This document shows, piece after piece, positions 3,101 through 57,973 of a stretch of 64,000 bases of DNA (the stretch's first letter is position 1; each line of letters opens with the position of its first letter). The notes under the pieces are model-generated. The model had not been told where the DNA came from. It ran no database searches and saw nothing but the letters and a program-made list of their open reading frames with translations. The translations under genes were made by a program, and so were the position numbers. Location: the NCBI RefSeq assembly GCF_000142905.1, contig NW_013657677.1:186001-250000 (forward strand), read 5' to 3'. The DNA is from Thecamonas trahens ATCC 50062. Lineage: Eukaryota; Protista; Apusomonadida.

Positions 3101-6100
3101 GGCCTCGCTGCGGGCCCAGCTTGATGCTGCCCAGGCGGCACTGACCAAGGAGCGACAGTCGGCGTCGCAGCTCGCCGACTCGCTGCACGCCGAGCAAGCC
3201 GCAGCTCTCCTTGCCGCCGCCAAGGAGCGTCGGCTTTCTGACCTTGCTGAGCTTCTCAACGAGCACTTTGGTGCAGCCCTCAACGTCTCGCTTGACTCTA
3301 CTGGCGGACCCGATGCATCGGCCGAGCTCTCACAGCTGAAAGAGTTGCTCGACACGCTTTCAACCGATGTGCACCACACTACTCCGCCGCGGACGTTGTC
3401 ACAGTCACTGGCGTCAACAACCCAGTTGCCGCCAAGCTCACCGTCACGGGCCGGTCTTCATCCTGACCTCTCGCAGCAGCTGGAGGATCTTGATCGGACC
3501 CATGACGAACGTCGTGCTGCGCTTGCTGCTCGTGATGCGGCCGAGGCGCAGTTGACCGAGAGCCGCGCCGAGCTCGCCGCAGTATGTGCCGAGCTCGAAA
3601 CGCATGCGGCGAGTCTTGCCGCTACTCGCGCCGAAAAGGCCGAGGTCGAGCACCGATTGGGCGAGCTGCACAGCTTGGTGGCCGAGGCTGAAGGCAGGCT
3701 GACCAAGGCCGAGGCTGCAGCTCGGCTGGCTCGGCTGCGTGGTCCGGCGTCAGAGCGCGAGTCGAGCGCCGCGAGCGCGCGCTTTTGGAAGAGATACAGA
3801 GCCAGGTGGCTGCCGCAGCAGCAGAGAAGAAGAAGCTCGACGAGACGGTCCGGTTGCTCCGGCAAGAGGCCGGGGCTCGTGCGACTGCCTCCGCTGAAGC
3901 CGAGGCCGCGCTTGCCATGCTCCGCAACCAGGTTCGCGAGCTTGAGACTCAGGCTGTGGAGGCCAGGACAAGCTTGAGCCAGTACTCGGACGAGCAGCGA
4001 AAGATGGCGCTTGCGCTTGATGCCGAGGCCCGAGCTCAGCATGTGGCCGAGCTGGAGGCCCAGCGCGAGTCGCTCATGGCAGAGCTCAAGGCACTGACCA
4101 AGGCCAAAGTCGCCGCCCAGGCCGAGGCCGCCGATGCAGCTACTACGGCGGCCCAAGTCACCGCCCAAGCCGCGGCTGTCGAGGCCGCCGAGTCAGAGCT
4201 GGCCTCGCTGGAAGCTGCCAAGGCTGCTGCCGCCAGTGAGCTCGCTGCGCTGCGAGCCGAGCTTGCGAGCGACGTAGACGCGGCCCGCGCTGCTGCTGTT
4301 GCCTTCATCGACTCGGAAATGGCCCATCTGCGCGCGTCCAAGGACGCCATCGAAGAGGCGCTCAACGGGGTCGCTGGATGGAAGGAGTTTGTTGATGCGA
4401 GCGTCTCAGTGATTAGCAACTCAGGCGGCGAGCTAGACAAGAACTGCCCCATGCTGGAGCAGGTGTCTGTCTTTGCCAAGCCGCACGCAGAGGTGCTGCT
4501 TGCGCTTGAGCGTTCTGCTGTTGACCGCCTCGGCGTGTCGCTCTCTGCCGACAACGTTGGCGGGCTTGCTGTTGTCGAGACGTGCTGGCTCTCGAGCCTG
4601 CAGGCAGAGCTTGCTGAGAACAAGGCTGCGTTGTCGGCACAAGAAGACGCCATGTTTGTGGGCCTCAAGGCTCAGAATGTGTACCTGGAAGAGGAGGTGG
4701 CCAAGGCTCGCGAGGAGATGGAGAGCCTGCAGAGCGAGCTGGCCGAGGGCCGGGACCGGGAGGCGCAGCTGGCCGCCGATCTTGAGGCAGCGCGGACCAA
4801 CGCCGCCGACCAGACCCAGGCCGAAGCCTCGCTAGAGGATCTGGTGCGGTCATTGCATGCCGAGCTCGAGACCAAGAACATGCAGATTTTCAAGCTCGAG
4901 GACGCGTTGTCGAACGCATCCGAGGCTGGAAGCAAGGCTGCGGCTTCGGCTGCGGCGGCGTCACCGTACCTAGAGTGCGAGCTTGCACCGTCGACGCTTG
5001 CGGCCATGAGCGCGTTTTTCAAGTACCACACGGCGCGAGTGGCTCAGCTGCAGCAGGGAGTGGTGGAGGCGCATGGACGGACCAAGGAGGCTGTGCACCA
5101 GCTCAAGTCTGCTTTTGCTGCCAGGGAGGCGCGGTTGGTGGCCAAGATCAACGACGCCAACGAGGGAGCGGCGGCAGCCAAGGCCGACCACGCGTTGGTC
5201 ATCCAGATGCTGCGGCGGCAGGTCGCCGAGCTGCAGGCTGGCTCCGGCGCGTCTCCTGCGCTAGCCGCCGAAGTTTCGGCTGCTGTAGACAAGCTGGGCA
5301 CGCTCGCCAGAGTCCTGCGCGATGAGCGTCGCAATCTGGGCGAGGTCAATGCGCTTGCCAAGCTTGTCACCGAGAAGGACGCTCAAATCGGGTTCCTTGT
5401 CGCCGACTTGCACGCCACCAAGCAGGAGCTGACCATTGCGCGCAAGTCGTCCGAGTCAGACGCCTTGCTCCTGCATGATCTCTTTGAGCAGCTGCAGCGG
5501 CTTCAGGAAGAGAACTTCCGCTACACAGCCGCCCGCGTTCGCCCGGCAGAACGAGGCATCAACCCGCCACCGTCCGAGCCTGCGCTGCCTGCAGCCCAGT
5601 CTGCGCCGCCTGCGCCTGCGCTCTCGGAGCCGTGGCCGTCTGAGCCGAGCGACGTCGTCCTTCCGCCTTGGCCACAGGGCGGCAATGCCGACAATAAGGC
5701 CGGAGGCGCGGTCAAGACCGCTGGCGCTGTCGCTGCAGAGGCCGAGATTGGGGCCGAGGACAGCCCAACGCTCTCGTCAAGCAGCAGCGACGAGCCGAAC
5801 GCATCCGGCGTGATGGACTCGCTCGGGTGGGTCCAGCTTGAGCCCGAGCCCAAGCCCAAGGCGGAATCTGTGCCAGCTCACTCGCTTGCGAGTGAGGAAT
5901 CTTCTGAAGTGTTTGAGCTGGAGCATGGGCCTGCAGGGGCCGACTTTGAGGCGCGGGCGGCGACACCGGCCAAACTCACGCCGCAGCAAGTGGCGTACCT
6001 CGCCGATCTGCGTGATCAAGTCCTTGAGCTTGAAGCGCGTCACCGGGCTCTGTCCGAGCAAGAGCACTCGCTGGAGGCGACGGAGGACTCGGTCTCGCTC

Positions 6101-6478
6101 CGAGACTCGACCCAAAGCCGAGCAGCGTCGACCTCGTCGCTCCTTCCGGTCTTCCATGCCAACGAGTCGTTTGACTCGCGCGCGCACAAGCTCCAGCAAA
6201 AGCTGGCGTACCTCGAGATCATGACCCAGCTCAAGGCCGAGAAGCTCCGTGGCTCGGGCGCGGGGGCACTCACCGCGACCTACCTCGATGCCAGCGACAG
6301 CAATCCAGCCTCGTCAACCTTCCAAGATGTGTATTCCGTCGGCGACACGCTGGGCGGCGACACGTTTGGCGACAACACGTTTGGCGGCAACACGTTTGGC
6401 GGCAACACGTTTGGCGGCGACGACTCGCTGGTCACCGGTTCGCTCGATACCATGGGCGATACAACCATCAACCATTGA
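162..6478 (+). CDS. CNTRL: Centriolin/CEP110-like LRR + long coiled-coil centriolar protein (~2100 aa), split by 3 apparent frameshifts (~513, ~1890, ~3720-3785)
   Basis: N-terminal VRHITPTLLEK...IRYIENLE, SDS22-type LRRs, LRRCT NPVADLPHARAFVVFTLPALEVLDG and YEVEQELAFYKID match centriolin as remembered. ORFs 162, 583, 1920 and 3785 join into one protein with single-base corrections. Confidence 0.8.
6343..6420 (+). repeat. 15-nt coding tandem repeat (GGNTF/GDTF units) at the centriolin C-terminus
   Basis: ggcggcaacacgttt-like unit repeated about 5 times. Confidence 0.85.
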
Positions 6479-6768
6479 AACCAAAAGAACTCGATCTGTA
6501 TCTACCTCTTCATCCGCCACATTCACGCGATGGCGCAACAGCCTGGGCCAGCCGCAAAATGTCGCGGGTTTTGGAATGAAGCCAAGTGCTGCGGCGCCGC
6601 CTTGAGTCACGCGCTCGGCAGCCGTGGCAATCGTGGCCATGACTCGCCGCCCTCTCTCCCCCGCCCCCCATATGTCCTCAGCACCACCACACTCCTCCTC
6701 CTCCCCTTCCACCTCTTCCCACCTCTACTCGCCCTCTCTCCACCCTACCTCCCACCACAGACCCGACC

Positions 6769-7928
6769 ATGTCGTACTACTCCATGCTTGGCCTCTCCAC
6801 CTTTAACATTGAGAACGGGTTCCTGGAGGCTCTTGCCCGCTCCTTCCGCGACGCCCTCCTCACCCGGGCAGACTACCAGAACCTCATGCAGTGCGAGCGG
6901 CTGGACGGTACGTACTCCCCTTCAAGCCGTCCCCCTCCCCCTCCCCTCCCTTCCCCCCTCTCTCCCTCACTCCTCCCTCACACACTCCATGCGGACTGCC
7001 AGACCTCAAGCTCCACCTCTCGTCGACCGACTACGGCAACTTTCTGGCCGACGTGCCTGGGGCGCTCAAGACGTCTATGCTGGAAAAGCGGGCGTGGGAC
7101 AAGCTTGTGGGCGAGTTTGAGCACATGCGCCTGCAGGCTGTGCAGCCGCTGGCGCAGTTCATGGAGTACATCCGGTACCAGTACATGATCGACAACGTGG
7201 TCTTTCTCATCACCGGCACGCTCCACGGCAAGGACGCTGAGACGCTGCTCTCCAAGTGCCACCCGCTGGGCAAGTTTGACTCGATGGCGACGCTGACTGT
7301 GGCTACTACCGCCGCCGAGCTGTACGACTACGTGCTTGTGGAGACACCGCTGGCCGGCTACTTTGTCAACGCCTCGCTGCAGGAGGGCGACCTCGACGAG
7401 ATGAACATCGAGATCATTCGGTCGACGCTGTACAAGGCGTACCTGGAGGACTTTTACAAGTTTGTGTGCTCGCTCGGCGGCGTGACGGCGTCGGTGATGA
7501 AGGAGATTCTCGAGTTTGAAGCCGACCGGCGGTCGATCAACATCACCATTAACTCGTTTGGCACCGAGCTCTCGGTCGATGACAAGAAGAAGCTGTACCC
7601 CTCGTTCGGTCAGCTCTACCCTGAGGGCATCGACAAGCTGCTGAAGGCTGAGGATCTGGACATGGTCCGGGCTGCTGTCGACTTTTACACTCCGCTCGAC
7701 CAGTTCTTCGACGACGTTGACGGCATTGGCGGCGACTCGCTCGAGGACAAGTTTATTGCCCACGAGGTCCACCTGCACAAGGAGTCGTTCAACCAGCAGT
7801 ACCATCTCGGCGTCTTCTACTCGTTCCTCAAGCTCAAGGAGCAGGAAATCCGCAACCTGCTGTGGATCGCCGAGTGCATTGCGCAGAACCAGCGTGACCA
7901 GATGACCAAGTTTGTGCCGATGTGGTAA
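6769..7928 (+). CDS. ATP6V0D1: V-type ATPase V0 subunit d; exons 6769-6907 and 7003-7928
   Basis: FNIENGFLEAL...QCERLD|DLKLHLSSTDYG...EFEADRRSINITINSF...KEQEIRNLLWIAECIAQ. Intron 6908-7002 (GTACGT...CAG) joins the frames. Confidence 0.96.
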
Positions 7929-8017
7929 ACCAACATCTCTGCCGGGTGCGTTACATGTATGTAGTGTGCGTGTTGGGTTGTGACGGAGAGTGTGTGGGGT
8001 GCTTTTCTGATCCAGAC

Positions 8018-11000
8018 TCAAGACTGCAGGGCCTTGGCGACGTTGGCCTGGACCTCATTGTCGAGCGACTGGACAATGGCATCAAAGTCGGCCGAGGCAA
8101 GCGACGAGTGGACCTGGCGCAGGATGTTGACGACGCGCGGGGTGAGCTCGTCGGAGCAAAACTGTGTGTTGAGGATTGAGGCAAGGACTGAGACGAGCTT
8201 GGGCAGGTTCGCACCGTTCTCGCCGAGGGCCCCGGCATGGTTCTGCTCGATTAGTGAGCAGACGAGGTCATAGACAAACTGGCCCTCGACGACGTCGTGC
8301 ATGATGGGCAGCTGCTCGATAAAGTAGGGAACAAGGGCCGAGGTATCGGTATTGTTCGACTGGTGGGCGATGATCTTGGCGAGGATGGCGATGGCGTTGT
8401 CGGTGGCGTAGGCGTGGTCGCCCTCACGAGCGTGGGGTAAGAGCAGTTTTCGCGGACGATGTTGAGGGTGATGTCCATGAGGTCGGCAAAGTCGTCGCCA
8501 AACTTGGCGGCGGCGGCGCCGAGGCCGTAGAGGGCGGCCTGGCGGACTTCGGGGTGCGGGTCAGTGGCGTAACGGATGACGTTGCCCATGATGTCGCCCA
8601 TGTACTGCTGGGCGGCCGGCCAAGCAAACTCGATGACGTCGTCCATGGCGCAGAGCGCCCACTGGCGCTCGGTGTGCGAGCGGTCGGGGTCGAGGAGTTC
8701 CATGAAGAGCGGCAGGAGGGCCTCGACGTAGATGGGGAGGAACGAGGCACCGTGAGTGCGGAACGTAGTCGAGGCGATCTGGACCACGAGCCGGAAGACG
8801 AGCTCGTCCAAGGCGGCGCGCTGCTCGAGGCTCGTCTCCATCTCCTCGTCATAGTCGATGTCGTTGCGAGCGTCGTTGCGGATGCCGCGGCGCTTCTCGA
8901 GGTCGTCCATGAGAATGGCGAGGAGGGTGGCGATGTTGTTCATCATCTTCTCGTCGAGGCAGTTGTCGCCGAGAGCAAAGATCGAGTTGGAGAGTGCCTC
9001 CAAGAAGGTGCAGAGAACCTCCAGGTCGGGCTCCGCATGGATGGTCTGCAGCAGGTGGGTGATGATGTACTCGAAGAGGCCGGTGAGGTACTCGACGCCA
9101 TCGGACGAGTTGGTCCGCTTGAAGTAGTCGGCGGTGGCCATGAGGAGGAAGGGACAGGCGTCGGCGGCAGCCGTCCGCACATCGTCGAAAAAGTAAAAGG
9201 TGAGGAGCGGGACCATGAGCTTGGCAATCTGGTCGACGTACTCCCAGATGGCGCCCTGCAGGTCGCGGACGAGGCAGGTGAGCATGCGGCAGGCGACGGC
9301 CTTGTCCTCGAGTGTCGACGTCCGGAGCTGGACACGAGTCGAGCCGAGGACAACGGTCTGCCAGCCAACCTGGACGTCGGCGAGCTCGTCAGCGTCCGAG
9401 AGGGTGTACTCGGGCTTGATGGCGGCGGTCTCGAGGAGCGGAGGCATGATGGTAGCGAGGTAGGGCACAAAGTCCTCACCAAGCGTCTGCGCAATGCGCG
9501 ACCAGGCCTCGAGGAAGTACGAGGTCTGCGGGTCGTCCGGCGGCAGGTCCTGGGCCTGGATCTTGATCATGAGGTCCATGACCTCGATGGCGTCGTTGAG
9601 GAAGAGCTCCTTGCCCACAGCGAGGCCAATCATGGAGATGGCCTCCATGGCCTTGCCGCGCATGGCGCGGAAGTCTTCACCGTTGGCCTGGTACAGGATC
9701 TGCTTGAGGAGCGGGACGAAGACTTCGTAGTACGTGACAAACGCGCCCTTGGAGCGCTCGGCAATGGCAGCCACGCACGTGAGCGCCTGCTCCTGCACGC
9801 GAGTCTGCCCGTTGTCCAGCATGCCCATGAGCGCGGCAAAGATCTCGTCGAGGTACCCGGTGAGGAGCTCCGGGTGGAGGCCCTGGGCCAGGTTGACAAG
9901 CGCGGCGCATCCATACGCCCGCGTTCGCGGGTTCGCCACGTCGCCCATGACCGTCACGAGCGGGCTGACAAGCTGCTCGTGGAAGGTGTTCTGGAAGGCC
10001 GGCGTAAAGTCGATGCACAGCTGGCCAAAGAGCTGGCAGGCCGCGTAGCGGACGCGCGCGTTCTCCTCGAGCAGGTACGGGAGGCACGAGTTGACAATGT
10101 CGGCCAGCGAGCCGGTCATCTCCTCGCGGCAACCCTCGGCGACGGCGGCGAGCGCGATGAGCGCGGCGCGGCGGTACGTCCACTCGTTGTGCTTGAGCAT
10201 CTGCGGCACAAACTCGAGCACCACAGGCAGGACCGTGTTGCCGCCGAGGGCCACAGCAAGCCGGTCGAGCGCCTGCTCGCCAAAGTCCGAGATGCCGATC
10301 TCAAACTCGTCCTCATCCTCGTGCTCCTGCCAGCCGGGCGAGTCCTCGACCGCCACCATCATGGTGAGGCAGACCGGGAGCACGTTGTCCATAAACTTGT
10401 CAAACTTGCGCATCATGGCCGGCGCGCTCTCGCAGATCTTGGTCAAAAACTCGAGCGCAAGCTGGCGAGTCTGGTGCAGCAGCTTCTCGGTCGTCGCAAT
10501 CTGGAGCATGGCGTTGACCACGTGGTCGAGCGCAGGGCGGAGAGCCTTGGGCGTAAACTCGGAAATGTCGATGAAGAACTGGATGGCCTTCATGGCGTGG
10601 TCCTCCACGCCCGAGTTCAGCCCGTCCGAGACAATTTCAAGCATGGCCGGGAGCAGCGGCTCGTAGTACGTCATCGTCTCCGTCTCTGAATCGCGGAGCG
10701 AGCAGAGGAACTGCGTCGTGGCGTTGAGGCCCATGAGCCGGACCGCAAACGAGTTGGAGTCGGTGAGGCCTGTCGCAAACGTCTCACGCAGCGGCTCGGC
10801 AAACTGCCGAAGCGGCGAGTCGTGGACGGCGCACATCCGCGCAAACACAAAGAGCGTGTTGAGCCGGACGTCCGGGTTCGAGTGCGTCGCCATCGGGAAG
10901 AGGAACGGAAGCAGCTCTGGCCACTCCTGCTCCTGTTTCTGGTGGAGCGAGAAGCAGTCGGCAATGTTCTCGCAAATCGCACGCATCACCATCGGCACCT

Positions 11001-52940: not shown

Positions 52941-53432
52941 GTGGACAGCCATGCTGGACAAGTCTACCAATGTAGCTCGGCCTGCTGGCATGCTGTTGGC
53001 AAAGAGAGTTCCCACATCAAGCGGGCAAAGCTGTTGGAAGCACGGATCGGCGGGCGGCGAGTCGAGGAGGCCGAGGCCGACAGCGACGGTCGTGAGCTGT
53101 GCGCGGGCTTGTCGCCAGCGTATGTGGCGGCGCGTGCGGCACTTGATGTGGTACGCAAGGCTGAGGAGGACGAGAATGTGGCACCTTCCGGAGACTATGG
53201 CCACGGGAAGTGGGCCAGCGGCGGGGCGGCGGCGATGGAGGTGGGCAGCTCTCACGAGTGCAGCGCGCCGCTGCTGCCTCCGGGGCCGCCGGTGGTGCTC
53301 GTGATGCTTCCGGGCGCGGCGTCGCTGTTGCCTGTGGAGAGCGTGCGCGGCATGCGGCGGAAGCGGGGCGTCGGCGAGGTATTCAACGACGACGAGCCGG
53401 ACGCGAGCGCGGCGATGATGATGGTTGAGTAA
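52941..53432 (+). CDS. Possible short hypothetical protein
   Basis: Open frame filling an otherwise unexplained gap, convergent on the next gene. No recognisable motif and no clear ATG. Confidence 0.25.
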   Translation: MDSHAGQVYQCSSACWHAVGKESSHIKRAKLLEARIGGRRVEEAEADSDGRELCAGLSPAYVAARAALDVVRKAEEDENVAPSGDYGHGKWASGGAAAMEVGSSHECSAPLLPPGPPVVLVMLPGAASLLPVESVRGMRRKRGVGEVFNDDEPDASAAMMMVE

Positions 53433-53487
53433 AGAGATGGAGGAAGAAAGGGAAGAGGAGGCGCGGCGACGGCGCGCTCAGGGGGCT

Positions 53488-56400
53488 TTACATGTTGTGG
53501 CGGCGCGAGGCGATGAGGGCAAAGATGGCCGAGGCGATGACAAAGGCGACAAACTCGGTGCGAACCGGCAGCTGGAAGGGCGAGCTGCCGGCGTGGTTGA
53601 CAGCGATGGAGAACATGGGCTCGACGGCCGGGATGGAGGCCGGGTCAAAGTCAGTGCCAGCGCGAGCGGCGGCGCGAGCGGCGTGGTCGGCCTGCTCGGC
53701 GGCACGGACGCGGTCGACCTCGCGGTAAAAGGCGAGCTCGTAGTCGCCGGCGGCGTCCGGGGTGGGGACGGCAAAGGAGACCTGGTAAGCGTCGTTGGAG
53801 GCACCGAGGGCGACGGGGACCTGGAAGAGCTCGGCCTTGGCGCCGTCGACGACCTTGAAGACGGAGCAGCGGAGCTGGGCGTTGGCGAGCTTCTTGCCCT
53901 GGCAGCCGAGCGAGAACTCGGAGACAAAGACGGTGGTGTCGCGGCGCTCGGCGTCGAACGAGTACGGCTCCGACGTGACCTTGATCTCACCGCCGATGAC
54001 GATGGGGTACTCGACCTTGTTCTCCGAGTTGGGCTTGTAGACCGGGAGCTGGGTGCCAGCGGCGTCGTAGGCGGCGACCTCGAGGATGCCGTCACCCTGG
54101 ACAGCGTTGGGGTTAATGGTCCAGGAGATGGCGAAGCCGTCGGCGGCGTCGCGGGCGGTGGCGCGCTCGCGGACCGAGACGAAACGGCGGCCGGCACGGA
54201 CGGCGTCATCGTGGGAGATGACGAGGTACATGCCCGGGGCGACGGCGTCGTCGGCGACAGCGGAAGCGACGTCGGCGGCAGAGAGCGACTTGCCCGAGAG
54301 GGTGTCGACGACAGTAAACTCAAACTCGACGACGTTGCCGTAGTAAAAGTCCTTCTTGGTGGGCGCGCCCTCAGCCGAGGACATCTCGAGGTGGACCGGG
54401 ACGGCGACGGAGAGCGGCGAAGCGTCCTCCCAGAGGGCAGCCTCGGCCGAGTCGTAGTTGTCGAGCTCGACGGCGTTGCCGGCAGCGTCGACGTAGGCAA
54501 ACTTGACGAGGTGGGTGCCGACGAGCGAGAGCGAGGTGGGGATCTCGAGCTCAAAGGCAACCTTGACGTTGGAGCCGGACGAGCCGGACGAGGGCGTGCC
54601 CTCGACCGACGCGACGACGGCGCCGTCCTCGGTGGTGAGCTGGAAGACAAAGGTGCGGGCGGCGGCGGCCGACGAGTGGTCAAAGTGGACGAGGGTGCGC
54701 ATGTCGGGCATGGCAGCCGGCTCCATGGCGACGGTGAGGACGTCACCGAGGGCAAGCTTGTGAACAGCCGAGGCAGCCGAGGCGGCGATGCCATTGACGG
54801 TCACGGACGAGGCGACCATGGACGAGACGTACTTGTACGACTTGACGGCCGAGGTGTGGACAAGGCCAGCACCGTCGGCGACCTCAAACACGGCCTCAAG
54901 GGCGCCAGTGGGGACGGCGACGCCCGAGAGCTCGGTGGCAAAGGCAACAGCGTCGTCGCCCGAGGCCGACGCACCGTCGTAGGCGAGCGAGGCGACGGCG
55001 ACACCGGAAGCGTCACGGAGCTGGAAGGCGACGGCAAAGTCGCCGACGCGCAGGTCCTCGTGGGTGACGTTGAAGAGGCGGAGCTGGTAGTCAAAGGCGA
55101 CACCGTCGCCGACCGACTCGCCCTCGGCAACGTCGGAAGCACCGTAGGTGACGGCGCCGGTAACCTCGAGGCCGTAGCCGATCGAGGCCGACTCGGAGCC
55201 GGCCCAGGCGATCTGGCCAATGCCAGCGACGTGCTTCGAGACGGAGAACTCAAGCGAGGCCTGGCCGAGGAGGCCGGCGGTATCGATGGTGTCGTGGCCA
55301 GTGTAGGCCGCCGAGACAGCCGAGTAGGCGAGCTCGTGGACGGCGCGGGCGGCACCGGGGAGGGTGACGTAGATCTCGACCTCGAGGCCGTTGACCGGGA
55401 CGCCGTCAGCAGCGGTGACGGTGACAAAGGGCTGGAACTGGGTGCCCTGGATCATCGAATCGCCATTGGGGGCGGCGTTGAGCGCGTTGAAGCCGACGCG
55501 GGTGGCAACAAAGGCCTCGAACGAGCCCGTGAGCGCAACAATGGCATGGCTGGCGGCGGCGTCGGCAAGGCCCGACGCGCGGGAACGGCAGGCCTTGAGT
55601 AGGGCCGGGAGGTAGACCGACTCGGCGACGTCGGCGTCCATGATCTTAAGCGACTCGGCAGCGAGGAACGAGGCCTGGATGGTGGCCGACGCGCCGGGCA
55701 CGCCGGCGGCGAGGAAGCCGCCGACCAGGCCGAGGTTCGGGTTCGGGTTCTGCAGCGAGGCAATGACGTCGACAAGGCCCGACTTGTAGGCCTCAAACGG
55801 AAAGTCGACAAACGAGCCGAGCAGGATGCCGGCATGGATGTCCTCCATCGACACGGTGTCCGACGCGCCAAAGTTAAAGTACACGCCCTTGGCCGAGGTC
55901 GCGAGCGACTCCTCAAGGTACGACTTGAGCGAGTCCTTCATCGGCTCGACAATGTCGAGGCGCGAGAGAATGTCAAGCGAGGCAAAGACGTACGCCGTCG
56001 AGACAACGTCACCCTTGGCGCCGGCGGTGGCGGCAAAGAGCCCGGTCTCCTGGTCGAGAAGCGAGGCGAGGAAGTCGGCGACAGCGTCGGGCTGCGGAAC
56101 CGAGGCGCCCATGTGCTGGTAGGCACGGAGGGCATGGAAGGTCGAGACAACGTCGGCGACGTTGGTCACCTCGTTGGCAGCGTAGCCGCCGTTGACAGAC
56201 GCAGCCTCGAGGTACGAGGCAGCAAGCGGTGAGTCGATCGTCGAGAGCGTTCCGTAGAGCGAGGCGAGGAAGAGCGCGGCCGACGTCGTCTTGACCGACG
56301 ACGCCTCCGAGTCGTTGTTCCAGAAGCCACCGTCCTCAGACTGGAAGGTAGCGAGGCCAGAGACAGCCTGCGAAAAGGTGACAGCCTACTCTCACCACCA

Positions 56401-56919
56401 ATCCCCACCATGATCTCCCGAGTGAGTCCTGAGCAAGTCCACCGGCCTGCAACAAGCCCGCAAGGCCACCATTCAGACAAAGTGCCAAAACTGCCGTTTC
56501 TTTGCCTCCTTTGGCCAACGAGCCAGCCAAGGCCACGCGCGGGCCGAGCAGACGAGGCGGGACGACGCAAGCAATGCGTTGAGCACGTTTCCAGAGCATG
56601 GCCAATACCATGACCATCATGCAAAACCCTTCAAAAGTGCTCTCAGCACGTCATGGCTTGTCCCTCGTCCACGTCTCGCCAAGCAGAGCATGGCTGGTGG
56701 CGGAGGTCGCGGCCAGCTGTGGGCGGCCAAAGCAAAAAATGAAGGGATCGAGGGCAGCAGTAGGGTGGGGAGGGAGGGGGGGAAGGAGGGCGTTGGTATG
56801 GATGATGAGGACTGCGCTTGACATGCTTAAAAGGGGGAAGGACGTACCTGGATGACAGGCGTGCACACGGCGCAGAGCACAACAAGTGCCGCAACAAGCT
56901 GGGCACCCACAACCTTCAT
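53488..56919 (-). CDS. ~983-aa type I ER membrane protein: signal peptide, helical-repeat and Ig-like luminal domains (ribophorin-II-like), C-terminal TRAP-delta (SSR4) domain; exon 1 56919-56848, intron 56368-56847
   Basis: Exon 1 MKVVGAQLVAALVVLCAVCTPVIQ is a signal peptide spliced in phase 0. C-terminal TVFVSEFSLGC...YQVSF...AGDYELAFY...PMFSIAVNHAG...VRTEFVAF + single TM matches TRAP-delta. Strong codon bias suggests high expression. Confidence 0.8.
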
Positions 56920-57149
56920 TGTTGGGTTGAGATGTGTGTGGTGGCCTGAACGGTGAATGGTGTCCCGACGAGCAGTGGCGCCGTTTGACTGATGTGATTT
57001 GGGAGGATTGGGTGTGGGGGGTGTGGGGGGTGGAAGACAAAAAATTGTTGTCCCTCCAGCAGCATGTGCAACCTGTGCTCTTTTCTTGAGGTCGCTTTGC
57101 TTTTTCGCGTTGGGGCAAGTGCAACGATGTCAATAGAAGGTGGAGGCGG

Positions 57150-57229: not shown

Positions 57230-57973
57230 ATGGCTGATACTAAGACTCCGACCCTCGCTGTGGTCACCGGCGCCTCGTCAGGCATCGGACGGGCGACTGC
57301 GCTGGCGCTGGCCAAGCAGGGCCGGCCGCTGCTGCTCGCACGTCGTGCCGACCGGCTGGCCGAGGTTCAGGCGGAGATCGGTGCCGAGGTGTGCGAGGTG
57401 GCGTCTGTGGATGTGACGGACAGGGAGGCTGTTGCGACGGCGGTAGAGGCGGCAGTTGCCAAGCACGGGCCGGTGGATGTGCTTGTCAACAATGCTGGGG
57501 TGATGAAGCTGGGCAAGGTTGCGAGCCAGGATCCGGCCGAGTGGAAGCTTATGCTCGACGTCAACCTCATGGGCCTGTTCAACGTCACGCACACGGTCCT
57601 TCCGTCGATGGTGGAGCGGAACGGCGGTACGATTGTCAACATCTCGTCGATTGCTGGCTTCAAGACCTTTGCCAACCACGCCGCGTACTGCGCCACCAAG
57701 TTTGGCGTCCACGGCTTTACCGAGACGCTCCGCGAGGAGGTGAGCGGCAAGAACGTCCGCATCTCGCTTGTCTCGCCGGGCGCGGTCTCGACCGAGCTCC
57801 TCTCGCACACCACCGACGAAGAGATCAAGGCCGGATACGAGGCGTGGAAGGAGGACATCGGCGGCGCCATCGAGGCCGTCAACGTGGCCGACTGCATCGC
57901 CATGATTGTCTCGCAGCCGCAGAACGTGTGCATCCGCGAGATCTCACTCGCCGCCACCAAGCAGGCCCCGTAA
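57230..57973 (+). CDS. Classical short-chain dehydrogenase/reductase (NADP-type, YdfG-like)
   Basis: TGASSGIG, ARR, VNNAG, NISSIAG, YCATK, SPGAVSTEL. Confidence 0.92.
   Translation: MADTKTPTLAVVTGASSGIGRATALALAKQGRPLLLARRADRLAEVQAEIGAEVCEVASVDVTDREAVATAVEAAVAKHGPVDVLVNNAGVMKLGKVASQDPAEWKLMLDVNLMGLFNVTHTVLPSMVERNGGTIVNISSIAGFKTFANHAAYCATKFGVHGFTETLREEVSGKNVRISLVSPGAVSTELLSHTTDEEIKAGYEAWKEDIGGAIEAVNVADCIAMIVSQPQNVCIREISLAATKQAP

What the first reader, a model, noticed from the sequence alone, without database searches (positions are those of the whole stretch)
53488..56919. Giant TRAP-delta with a ribophorin-II-like luminal extension: candidate TRAP-OST fusion
Seen: one spliced ORF of ~983 aa with a signal peptide. 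Its last ~165 aa (about 53488-53990) carry TRAP-delta signatures and a single TM. The preceding ~800 aa start with helical repeats bearing GGF/GLF turns (FQSEDGGF, NGGYAA, ETGLFA, VGGFLA, KGVYFNF), followed by several beta-rich Ig-like blocks. Established: animal TRAP-delta (SSR4) is only ~170 aa and lies at the TRAP-oligosaccharyltransferase interface. RPN2's luminal part is an N-terminal helical domain plus beta domains, and RPN2 ends in three TMs, not one. Inference: the extension is a duplicate or relative of the RPN2 luminal region covalently attached to TRAP-delta. This would be a Rosetta-stone protein linking translocon-associated TRAP to N-glycosylation, i.e. a different translocon architecture in this lineage.
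Basis: partly seen in the sequence, partly recalled or inferred. Interest (0 to 1): 0.85.

Follow-up and report, generated by a model that had tools for sequence, protein, structure and literature searches.

The report
Giant TRAP-delta with toroid-capped luminal arm
This Thecamonas gene is the cell's only TRAP-delta (a subunit of the protein-import machinery of the endoplasmic reticulum). It is about six times longer than the animal protein: an enzyme-like helical ring on four beta-sandwich domains sits before the TRAP-delta part. This long form is shared with amoebae and ancyromonads and is not a copy of the glycosylation subunit ribophorin II.

Summary
Minus-strand gene 53488-56919 is Thecamonas trahens AMSG_00680, annotated as uncharacterized.

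Layout: signal peptide, a prenyltransferase-beta-like (alpha/alpha)6 toroid, four beta-sandwich domains, a TRAP-delta Ig domain with its helical insert, one TM.

The TRAP-delta assignment is solid. The family profile hits mammalian TRAP-delta at E 1e-20. This is the only TRAP-delta in a genome that also encodes TRAP alpha, beta and gamma.

- For: RPN2's own N-terminal domain has the same toroid fold, so the two proteins share a design: toroid, beta-sandwiches, membrane anchor.

The architecture is not lineage-specific. About 65 clusters (E below 1e-30) carry it, from Amoebozoa, an apusomonad and an ancyromonad; 38 of 39 full-length members hit both the TRAP-delta and toroid Pfam families. The papers I read describe TRAP-delta as a late animal gain and mention no long form.

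Function is inferred: a non-catalytic luminal docking arm beside OST. New variant of a known kind; interest moderate to high.

The parts
56920..56939 (-). 5' untranslated leader; transcript start near 56939
   Evidence: The loose end of a cDNA contig at 56939 is the reverse complement of the SMART template-switch oligo.
56848..56919 (-). Exon 1: residues 1-24, signal peptide
   Evidence: ATG at 56919-56917, a hydrophobic core, and a GT donor at 56847. Identical to the start of database protein P0001.
56386..56847 (-). Intron, 462 nt, GT..AG
   Evidence: Splice joint 56385|56848 in cDNA run X1; that run has no depth in bins 56475-56728.
53488..56385 (-). Exon 2: residues 25-989 plus the stop codon
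   Evidence: Uninterrupted frame. Equals P0001, AMSG_00680.
55510..56376 (-). Residues 28-316: (alpha/alpha)6 toroid, prenyltransferase-beta-like, apparently non-catalytic
55174..55509 (-). Residues 317-428: beta-sandwich domain D1
   Evidence: AF2 full-length model. The whole-model Foldseek list is dominated by MG/Ig arrays.
54823..55173 (-). Residues 429-545: beta-sandwich domain D2
   Evidence: AF2 model.
54442..54822 (-). Residues 546-672: beta-sandwich domain D3
   Evidence: AF2 model.
54022..54441 (-). Residues 673-812: beta-sandwich domain D4
   Evidence: AF2 model.
53584..54021 (-). Residues 813-958: TRAP-delta Ig-like domain
   Evidence: Pfam PF05404 at E 3.6e-14. The family profile hits mammalian TRAP-delta 8bf9_D, 8b5l_K and 8b6l_H at E 1e-20 to 8e-20 over chain residues 32-171.
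53659..53721 (-). Residues 913-933: helical insert between late beta-strands of the TRAP-delta domain. It corresponds to the hairpin that faces RPN2 in mammals.
   Evidence: Helix 913-933 in the model. It aligns with the human hairpin region. The role of the hairpin in mammals is from PMC11186639.
53509..53559 (-). Residues 967-983: single transmembrane helix
   Evidence: Hydrophobic stretch, helix 967-988 in the model, aligned to the TM of mammalian TRAP-delta.
53491..53508 (-). Residues 984-989: short basic cytosolic tail
   Evidence: Sequence. Many family members end in Lys-rich tails that look like KKxx or KxKxx.

Best explanation
The gene encodes the single TRAP-delta orthologue of Thecamonas trahens in a 'long' form. 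Shown or predicted from sequence and models: it is a type I membrane protein. Its membrane-proximal Ig-like domain (with the TRAP-delta helical insert) and its single TM match mammalian TRAP-delta. About 790 extra luminal residues precede that module. They fold as an N-terminal (alpha/alpha)6 toroid of the protein-prenyltransferase-beta type followed by four beta-sandwich domains. The toroid keeps the structural GGF repeat motifs but has no conserved Cys in the toroid, and no His or Asp triad among its conserved columns, so it is not an active zinc prenyltransferase. The same architecture is conserved in Amoebozoa, an apusomonad and an ancyromonad. Inferred: the C-terminal module sits in the TRAP complex next to TRAP-beta and gamma at the side that faces OST, as in mammals. 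The extension projects into the ER lumen as a stalk with a binding cap. It lies beside RPN2, which independently has the same design (toroid, beta-sandwiches, membrane anchor). The most likely job of the arm is as a non-enzymatic docking or chaperone-like platform for luminal folding and modification factors or for emerging nascent or glycosylated chains. This is by analogy with the mammalian RPN2 N-terminal domain, which binds a PDI-like density. Evolutionary inference: the long form is old (at least the ancestor of Amoebozoa plus Obazoa), and the roughly 170-aa animal SSR4 is a truncated derivative. TRAP-delta would then not be an animal invention.
Against: No experiment or complex prediction shows that this long protein assembles into TRAP. 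The function of the extension rests on analogy only: no ligand, partner or conserved surface was identified. I could not survey short TRAP-delta forms outside animals, so the claim that the long form is ancestral rests on a limited set of named taxa, most of them transcriptomes that could carry contaminants. No single read or contig spans the whole T. trahens transcript. Continuity rests on the uninterrupted exon and on complete transcripts of homologues.
Confidence: 0.7

Rival explanations
1. One reading: the extension is a duplicate or specific relative of the RPN2 luminal region fused to TRAP-delta, a Rosetta-stone protein that covalently links TRAP to OST.
For: Both proteins have the same order of fold classes: a prenyltransferase-like toroid, then beta-sandwiches, then a membrane anchor. 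Pfam PF05817 (RPN2 N-terminal domain) co-occurs with PF00432 in an archaeal toroid cluster and in 3 of 30 weak toroid hits, so both toroids belong to one broad superfamily. One of 39 family members hits Ribophorin_II_2nd at E 0.0034. TRAP-delta and RPN2 are neighbours in the mammalian translocon.
Against: BLASTP against the organism's own RPN2 finds nothing. No RPN2 Pfam domain is found in this protein. The family profile finds no RPN2 among PDB sequences at E up to 10. hhalign of each of the six domains against RPN2 alignments gives a probability of at most 5.6%. HMMs of the three RPN2 luminal domains give no hit better than E 0.04 on the family. The toroid is nearer to prenyltransferase beta subunits than to anything else. 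The domain count differs: four beta-sandwiches plus the TRAP-delta domain and one TM, against two beta-sandwiches and three TMs. RPN2 is separately encoded and complete. The RPN2 profiles had only 2-3 sequences, so power was limited.
Confidence: 0.1
2. The toroid is an active enzyme or specific small-ligand binder in the ER lumen. It could be a polyprenyl or dolichyl-diphosphate binder, a terpenoid enzyme, or a glycan-processing or lectin-like (alpha/alpha)6 module acting on freshly transferred N-glycans.
Against: There is no conserved Cys in the toroid, and no His or Asp triad among its conserved columns, as a zinc prenyltransferase site would need; the conserved positions are mostly the structural repeat motif. 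It has no alpha-subunit context. The toroid sits at the far end of a five-domain stalk, remote from the membrane where dolichol-linked donors are. GH matches have 7-13% identity and rank below the prenyltransferases.
Confidence: 0.12
3. The extension is an alpha-2-macroglobulin/TEP-like module (MG domains plus a TED-like toroid) acting as a covalent or cage-type trap or chaperone.
Confidence: 0.04
4. Annotation artefact: two adjacent genes (a secreted toroid/Ig protein and a short TRAP-delta) read as one.
For: No single T. trahens RNA contig spans the whole gene.
Against: One uninterrupted 2.9-kb exon with no stop. cDNA pieces lie along the exon and the 5' splice is confirmed. Complete-ORF transcripts of about 930-1030 aa with both domains occur in many independent transcriptomes: 38 of 39 full-length members hit both Pfam families. 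The model shows no linker of low confidence between D4 and the TRAP-delta domain.
Confidence: 0.02

Closest known systems
Mammalian TRAP-delta / SSR4 (PDB 8B6L chain H, 8BF9 chain D, 8B5L chain K)
   Same: Homologous luminal Ig-like domain with a helical insert between late strands, a single C-terminal TM and a short cytosolic tail (family profile E 1e-20). It is encoded alongside TRAP alpha, beta and gamma.
   Different: The animal protein is 173 aa and starts at the Ig domain. This one has about 790 extra luminal residues (a toroid plus four beta-sandwiches) in front of it. The literature treats TRAP-delta as a late, animal-side addition (PMC5321747, PMC11186639), whereas this form occurs in an apusomonad, Amoebozoa and an ancyromonad.
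Ribophorin II (RPN2) of oligosaccharyltransferase
   Same: Same design: a signal peptide, a membrane-distal prenyltransferase-like alpha/alpha toroid, beta-sandwich domains and a membrane anchor (for the RPN2 toroid, for this protein). RPN2 is the neighbour of TRAP-delta in the mammalian translocon.
   Different: No detectable sequence or profile similarity. RPN2 has two beta-sandwich domains and three TMs. RPN2 is present separately and complete in this genome.
Protein prenyltransferase beta subunits (RabGGTase beta 1DCE_B and 3DSS_B; GGTase-I beta 3DRA_B and 1N4P_B; FTase beta 2ZIR_B)
   Different: 12-17% identity. No conserved Cys in the toroid, and no His or Asp triad among its conserved columns. 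It lies behind a signal peptide, so it is luminal rather than cytosolic, and it is fused to beta-sandwich domains rather than paired with an alpha subunit.
Alpha-2-macroglobulin / complement / CD109 (TEP) family
   Same: Strings of MG-like beta-sandwiches plus an alpha/alpha toroid (the TED) in one secreted or luminal polypeptide.
   Different: Different domain order, no thioester cysteine, very low global TM scores.
NOMO of the BOS complex (from general knowledge; not tested here)
   Same: Another translocon-associated type I protein whose large luminal part is a chain of Ig-like domains hanging below the translocon; BOS competes with TRAP for its site (PMC11186639).
   Different: NOMO has no toroid cap and no TRAP-delta domain. 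No similarity search against it was run here.

Membership tests
TRAP-delta (SSR4, Pfam PF05404) | Match to the family HMM above the curated cut-off | tested here: met
   53.1 bits against a cut-off of 25, E 3.6e-14, profile positions 20-158 of 162. 38 of 39 full-length homologues also match.
TRAP-delta (SSR4, Pfam PF05404) | Homology to experimentally placed mammalian TRAP-delta across the Ig domain and TM | tested here: met
   The family profile hits 8bf9_D, 8b5l_K and 8b6l_H at E 1e-20 to 8e-20, chain residues 32-171 of 173.
TRAP-delta (SSR4, Pfam PF05404) | Type I topology: signal peptide, luminal Ig-like domain with a helical insert, one C-terminal TM, short tail | tested here: met
   Sequence and AF2 model: strands 816-912, helix 913-933, strand 949-955, helix 967-988. 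This is predicted, not measured.
TRAP-delta (SSR4, Pfam PF05404) | Co-occurrence with the other TRAP subunits; single copy | tested here: met
   The only PF05404 match in the genome is this gene. TRAP gamma, alpha and beta are found above their cut-offs.
TRAP-delta (SSR4, Pfam PF05404) | Physical assembly into the TRAP complex at Sec61 | not testable with these tools
   Needs co-purification or cryo-ET. See Tried and rejected for the one complex job that gave no verdict.
TRAP-delta (SSR4, Pfam PF05404) | Small single-domain protein of about 170 aa, as in animals | tested here: not met
   989 aa with five extra domains.
Ribophorin II (RPN2) | Matches to Pfam PF05817, PF23861, PF23860 and PF25147 | tested here: not met
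   None at E up to 10 in this protein. Among 39 homologues there is one weak PF23861 hit at E 0.0034. The true T. trahens RPN2 hits all four.
Ribophorin II (RPN2) | Sequence or profile similarity to RPN2 | tested here: not met
   BLASTP, family profile against PDB sequences, hhalign, RPN2-domain HMMs. The RPN2 profiles were shallow, 2-3 sequences.
Ribophorin II (RPN2) | Three C-terminal transmembrane helices | tested here: not met
   One TM only.
Ribophorin II (RPN2) | N-terminal alpha/alpha toroid followed by beta-sandwich domains (fold level) | tested here: met
   This protein. RPN2 N-terminal domain: TM 0.71-0.74 to prenyltransferase-like toroid clusters. No direct superposition of the two was possible.
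Protein prenyltransferase beta subunit (PF00432) | HMM match and (alpha/alpha)6 fold | tested here: met
Protein prenyltransferase beta subunit (PF00432) | Zinc site (Asp, Cys, His) for catalysis | tested here: not met
   No Cys column conserved at 30% or more in the toroid, and no His among its conserved columns. This rests on family conservation, not on a residue-by-residue structural superposition.
Protein prenyltransferase beta subunit (PF00432) | Cytosolic heterodimer with an alpha subunit | tested here: not met
   The domain follows a cleavable signal peptide and precedes a luminal TRAP-delta domain, so it is luminal by topology. This is inference from sequence.
Alpha-2-macroglobulin / TEP | Thioester motif in the toroid (TED) and the canonical MG/CUB/TED order | tested here: not met
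   No conserved Cys in the toroid. The toroid is N-terminal. Global TM 0.1-0.15.

The most novel reading that the evidence does not exclude
The long, toroid-capped TRAP-delta is the ancestral form of the subunit, present before Amoebozoa and Obazoa split and perhaps earlier given the ancyromonad member. Its toroid cap works together with the same-fold toroid of RPN2 as a paired luminal platform under the Sec61-TRAP-OST translocon, recruiting oxidoreductases or chaperones to nascent chains. Animals later pruned TRAP-delta to its membrane-proximal domain and kept only the short hairpin contact to RPN2. The two toroid arms could even descend from one ancient toroid and beta-sandwich membrane protein.
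Probability: 0.15. Interest if true: 0.8.

Novelty: new variant of a known kind. Interest (0 to 1): 0.6.

Why it matters
TRAP is an abundant but functionally poorly understood companion of Sec61, and loss of TRAP-delta causes a human glycosylation disorder. The papers I read describe TRAP-delta as a small, late addition on the animal side and reconstruct the ancestral complex as alpha-beta-gamma (PMC5321747, PMC11186639). A conserved family of about 950-aa TRAP-delta proteins in Amoebozoa, an apusomonad and an ancyromonad would move the origin of the subunit back. It would suggest that the animal protein is a remnant. It would also give TRAP-delta a large luminal arm whose design mirrors that of its OST neighbour RPN2. 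That makes the question of what TRAP-delta does next to OST approachable in organisms where the luminal part is about 85 kDa and should be visible by cryo-ET and tractable for pull-downs. It is not evidence of a TRAP-OST gene fusion.

Tried and rejected
1. Complex prediction of TRAP-beta exon 2 (L005:1468-1863:-) with the TRAP-delta domain plus TM (residues 813-989): 'no answer', score 0.01. It is no evidence either way. TRAP-beta was given as one exon only and without an alignment.
2. Word-indexed homologue searches returned only 2-3 proteins each, because Ala-rich words swamped the candidate list. The exhaustive phmmer search was needed to see the family. The RPN2 profile stayed at 2-3 sequences, which limits the hhalign tests.
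3. Single-sequence phmmer of the protein against PDB sequences found nothing meaningful. The family profile was needed.
4. Whole-model Foldseek is dominated by generic Ig/MG arrays at TM about 0.1 and says little. Domain-level search was required.
5. The RPN2-duplicate hypothesis was tested by BLASTP, HMMER and hhalign and not supported.
6. Internal duplication of the beta-sandwich domains, including the TRAP-delta domain: hhalign probabilities of only 15-38%, inconclusive.
7. Active prenyltransferase and thioester-protein readings were rejected on missing conserved Cys and His.
8. The gene-fusion artefact was rejected.
9. The Schistocerca gregaria member (P0100) is not accepted as evidence for an animal long form. 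It lies on a gene-dense 219-kb contig that looks like protist contamination.
10. Earlier scan notes near this place concern other genes only.
11. A literature search for a described long TRAP-delta or for the RPN2 toroid fold found nothing.
Searches used exon 2 by reference, and the full-length fold used the database record P0001 returned.
Full report
**Gene model**

The window is contig C3:186001-250000 of Thecamonas trahens ATCC 50062. The protein is identical to NCBI AMSG_00680, annotated 'uncharacterized protein'.

- On the minus strand, an ATG at 56919 opens a 24-codon exon encoding a typical signal peptide, followed by a GT donor at 56847.
- A long open frame runs from 56385 to the stop at 53490-53488.
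- Contigs of a public cDNA run (X1) lie along this exon and carry one joint, 56385|56848. This removes a 462-nt GT..AG intron.
- That is the annotated acceptor and gives 989 aa.
- A loose end at 56939 is the reverse complement of the SMART template-switch oligo. The run is therefore cDNA, and the transcript starts about 20 nt upstream of the ATG.
- No single contig spans the gene. Continuity rests on the uninterrupted exon and on the homologues described below.
Exon 2 was searched by reference, and the full-length fold used the database record P0001.

**What the sequence is**

- The C-terminal 169 aa hit Pfam TRAP-delta (PF05404) at E 3.6e-14, 53.1 bits against a cut-off of 25.
- The N-terminal 290 aa hit the Prenyltrans alpha-alpha toroid (PF00432) at E 4e-6, just over its cut-off.
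- No Ribophorin II model matches at E up to 10.

**A family, not a one-off**

An exhaustive phmmer search of the 790-aa extension against 1.84 billion representatives found 177 proteins at E below 1e-3 and 65 below 1e-30. Most of the full-length ones (about 900-1035 aa) align over query residues 2-788 at 26-35% identity.

Of 39 full-length members aligned (A1), 38 hit TRAP-delta and 38 hit Prenyltrans. Named members are:
- Amoebozoa: Balamuthia mandrillaris, Gocevia fonbrunei, Stygamoeba regulata, Vannella robusta, Phalansterium solitarium.
- Ancyromonadida: Fabomonas tropica.

Many others are about 3-kb metatranscriptome contigs. A cryptophyte transcriptome (Hanusia phi) holds a divergent 1305-aa member. 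A Schistocerca gregaria RefSeq protein is a full-length member by the family HMM. It lies on a gene-dense 219-kb contig, so I take it for protist contamination.

**TRAP-delta identity**

- The family profile hits solved mammalian TRAP-delta chains (8bf9_D, 8b5l_K, 8b6l_H) at E 1e-20 to 8e-20. The match covers chain residues 32-171 of 173, that is, the Ig domain, the helical insert and the TM.
- This gene is the only PF05404 match in the genome.
- TRAP gamma, alpha and beta are all encoded.

It is therefore the organism's TRAP-delta orthologue.

**Structure**

AlphaFold2 on A1 gave a confident full-length model (mean pLDDT 88.7, pTM 0.62):

| Residues | Element |
|---|---|
| 1-24 | signal peptide |
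| 28-316 | twelve helices (toroid) |
| about 317-428 | beta-sandwich D1 |
| about 429-545 | beta-sandwich D2 |
| about 546-672 | beta-sandwich D3 |
| about 673-812 | beta-sandwich D4 |
| 813-958 | TRAP-delta domain, with a helix at 913-933 between late strands |
| 967-988 | TM helix |

The toroid folded alone reached pLDDT 95.9 and pTM 0.93. Its matches are:
- Foldseek: RabGGTase and GGTase-III beta subunits, E 5e-7, TM 0.68-0.75.
- ESM Atlas: TM 0.80 to GGTase-II beta clusters.
- By sequence, the family profile hits RabGGTase beta at E 1.4e-14.

Conserved toroid positions are mostly the structural repeat residues (Gly-Gly-Phe, Thr, Leu). No Cys column is conserved in the toroid, and no His or Asp triad is among its conserved columns. 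I therefore reject an active zinc prenyltransferase and a thioester (TED) site.

The whole-model Foldseek list is headed by alpha-2-macroglobulin and complement chains and other Ig arrays. TM is only about 0.1, which is generic similarity of tandem beta-sandwiches.

**The RPN2 question**

Evidence against a specific RPN2 relationship:
- The genome encodes a separate RPN2 (L001:1393-3408, AMSG_00802) with all four Pfam RPN2 domains. It matches human RPN2 at E 6e-47 over residues 10-660, so it is not N-terminally truncated.
- BLASTP of the extension against it finds nothing.
- The family profile finds no RPN2 among PDB sequences at E up to 10.
- hhalign of each of the six domains against RPN2 alignments gives probabilities of at most 5.6%.
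- HMMs of the three RPN2 luminal domains give no hit better than E 0.04 on the family.
- These RPN2 profiles hold only 2-3 sequences, so their power is limited.

Evidence for a shared design:
- The Atlas model of the T. trahens RPN2 N-terminal domain (residues 25-295) matches prenyltransferase/squalene-cyclase-repeat toroids at TM 0.71-0.74.
- An archaeal toroid cluster carries both PF00432 and PF05817 hits.
- Three of 30 weak toroid hits also hit PF05817.

RPN2 and long TRAP-delta thus share a design: a prenyltransferase-like toroid, then beta-sandwiches, then a membrane anchor. They belong to one broad toroid superfamily. Nothing shows that one is a copy of the other, and the TRAP-delta toroid is nearest to prenyltransferase beta subunits. 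This is not a Rosetta-stone fusion.

**How it most likely works**

Shown or predicted:
- Type I topology.
- A TRAP-delta module at the membrane.
- A rigid-looking, confidently modelled luminal extension ending in a non-catalytic toroid.

Inferred from mammalian structures:
- TRAP-delta sits in the beta-gamma-delta bundle at the TRAP side facing OST, and its helical hairpin points at RPN2 (PMC5321747; PMC11186639).
- The mammalian RPN2 N-terminal domain is flexible, membrane-distal, and binds a PDI-like density (PMC9892003).
- By analogy, the long arm would hang into the lumen beside RPN2 and act as a docking or chaperone-like platform.
- Many family members end in Lys-rich tails that look like ER-retrieval signals. 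The T. trahens tail does not.

This functional step is inference only.

**Evolution and novelty**

The papers I could read describe TRAP-delta as a later gain in animals and reconstruct the ancestral TRAP as alpha-beta-gamma. None mentions a long form.

The distribution found here (an apusomonad, Amoebozoa, an ancyromonad) argues that TRAP-delta is older. It also suggests that the animal 173-aa protein, which begins at the boundary of the TRAP-delta domain, is a truncated derivative. I could not survey short forms outside animals, so this remains an inference.

The protein is in public databases as 'uncharacterized' or 'prenyltransferase toroid domain-containing'. The architecture is visible to Pfam, but I found no description of it. 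I rate it a new variant of a known kind.

**Dead ends**

- A complex prediction (TRAP-beta exon 2 with the TRAP-delta module) gave no verdict and is not used as evidence.

Noticed in passing
L001:1393-3408 (+), G000 contig C3 about 284 kb from the gene; residues 25-295: The N-terminal domain of T. trahens RPN2 is itself a prenyltransferase/squalene-cyclase-like alpha/alpha toroid by the Atlas model (TM 0.71-0.74). A Bathyarchaeota cluster of about 267 aa carries PF00432 in 97% and PF05817 in 31% of members. This hints that the RPN2 toroid has prokaryotic stand-alone relatives.
   Followed up: partly
P0100 = XP_049848129.1, Schistocerca gregaria assembly GCA_023897955.2, 218,639-bp contig: A full-length long TRAP-delta (family HMM positions 25-957, E 3e-150) is annotated as a locust protein. 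Its contig has six genes in 19 kb, unlike a locust genome, so it is probably a protist contaminant in the assembly.
   Followed up: partly
L007 (ENA ERZ25039388 k87_161500, 195 kb), gene at 6001-8667: A divergent 888-aa family member (P0108) sits on gene-dense metagenome contigs of an unidentified protist, next to MyTH4-RhoGAP, kinase and SAS-6 genes.
   Followed up: no
window 56767: One DNA-like contig (run X13) has four extra bases, GGGA, behind 56767 inside the intron. This is a strain or assembly difference.
   Followed up: no
window 53300-56300: Marine and subsurface metatranscriptomes (runs X2, X3) hold pieces at least 99% identical to this gene, so Thecamonas trahens or a very close relative is present and transcribing it in environmental samples.
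   Followed up: no
window 53425-55602 (+) and 53478-54794 (-): Long alternative-frame ORFs (725 aa antisense; 438 aa in another minus frame) are Gly/Arg/Asp-rich or Ser/Pro/Arg-rich low-complexity translations of the GC-rich coding region. They look like artefacts, not genes.
   Followed up: no
window 57230-57973 (+): The neighbouring intronless 247-aa ORF looks like a short-chain dehydrogenase, transcribed divergently from the TRAP-delta gene, with about 290 bp between this gene's transcript start and the ORF's start codon.
   Followed up: no
Atlas cluster, no id (structure row 6): An Ascomycota-dominated family of about 906 aa carrying only PF00432 aligns with the Atlas model over residues 19-969 (TM 0.31). 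It may be a fungal relative whose TRAP-delta domain has diverged. I could not fetch it.
   Followed up: no
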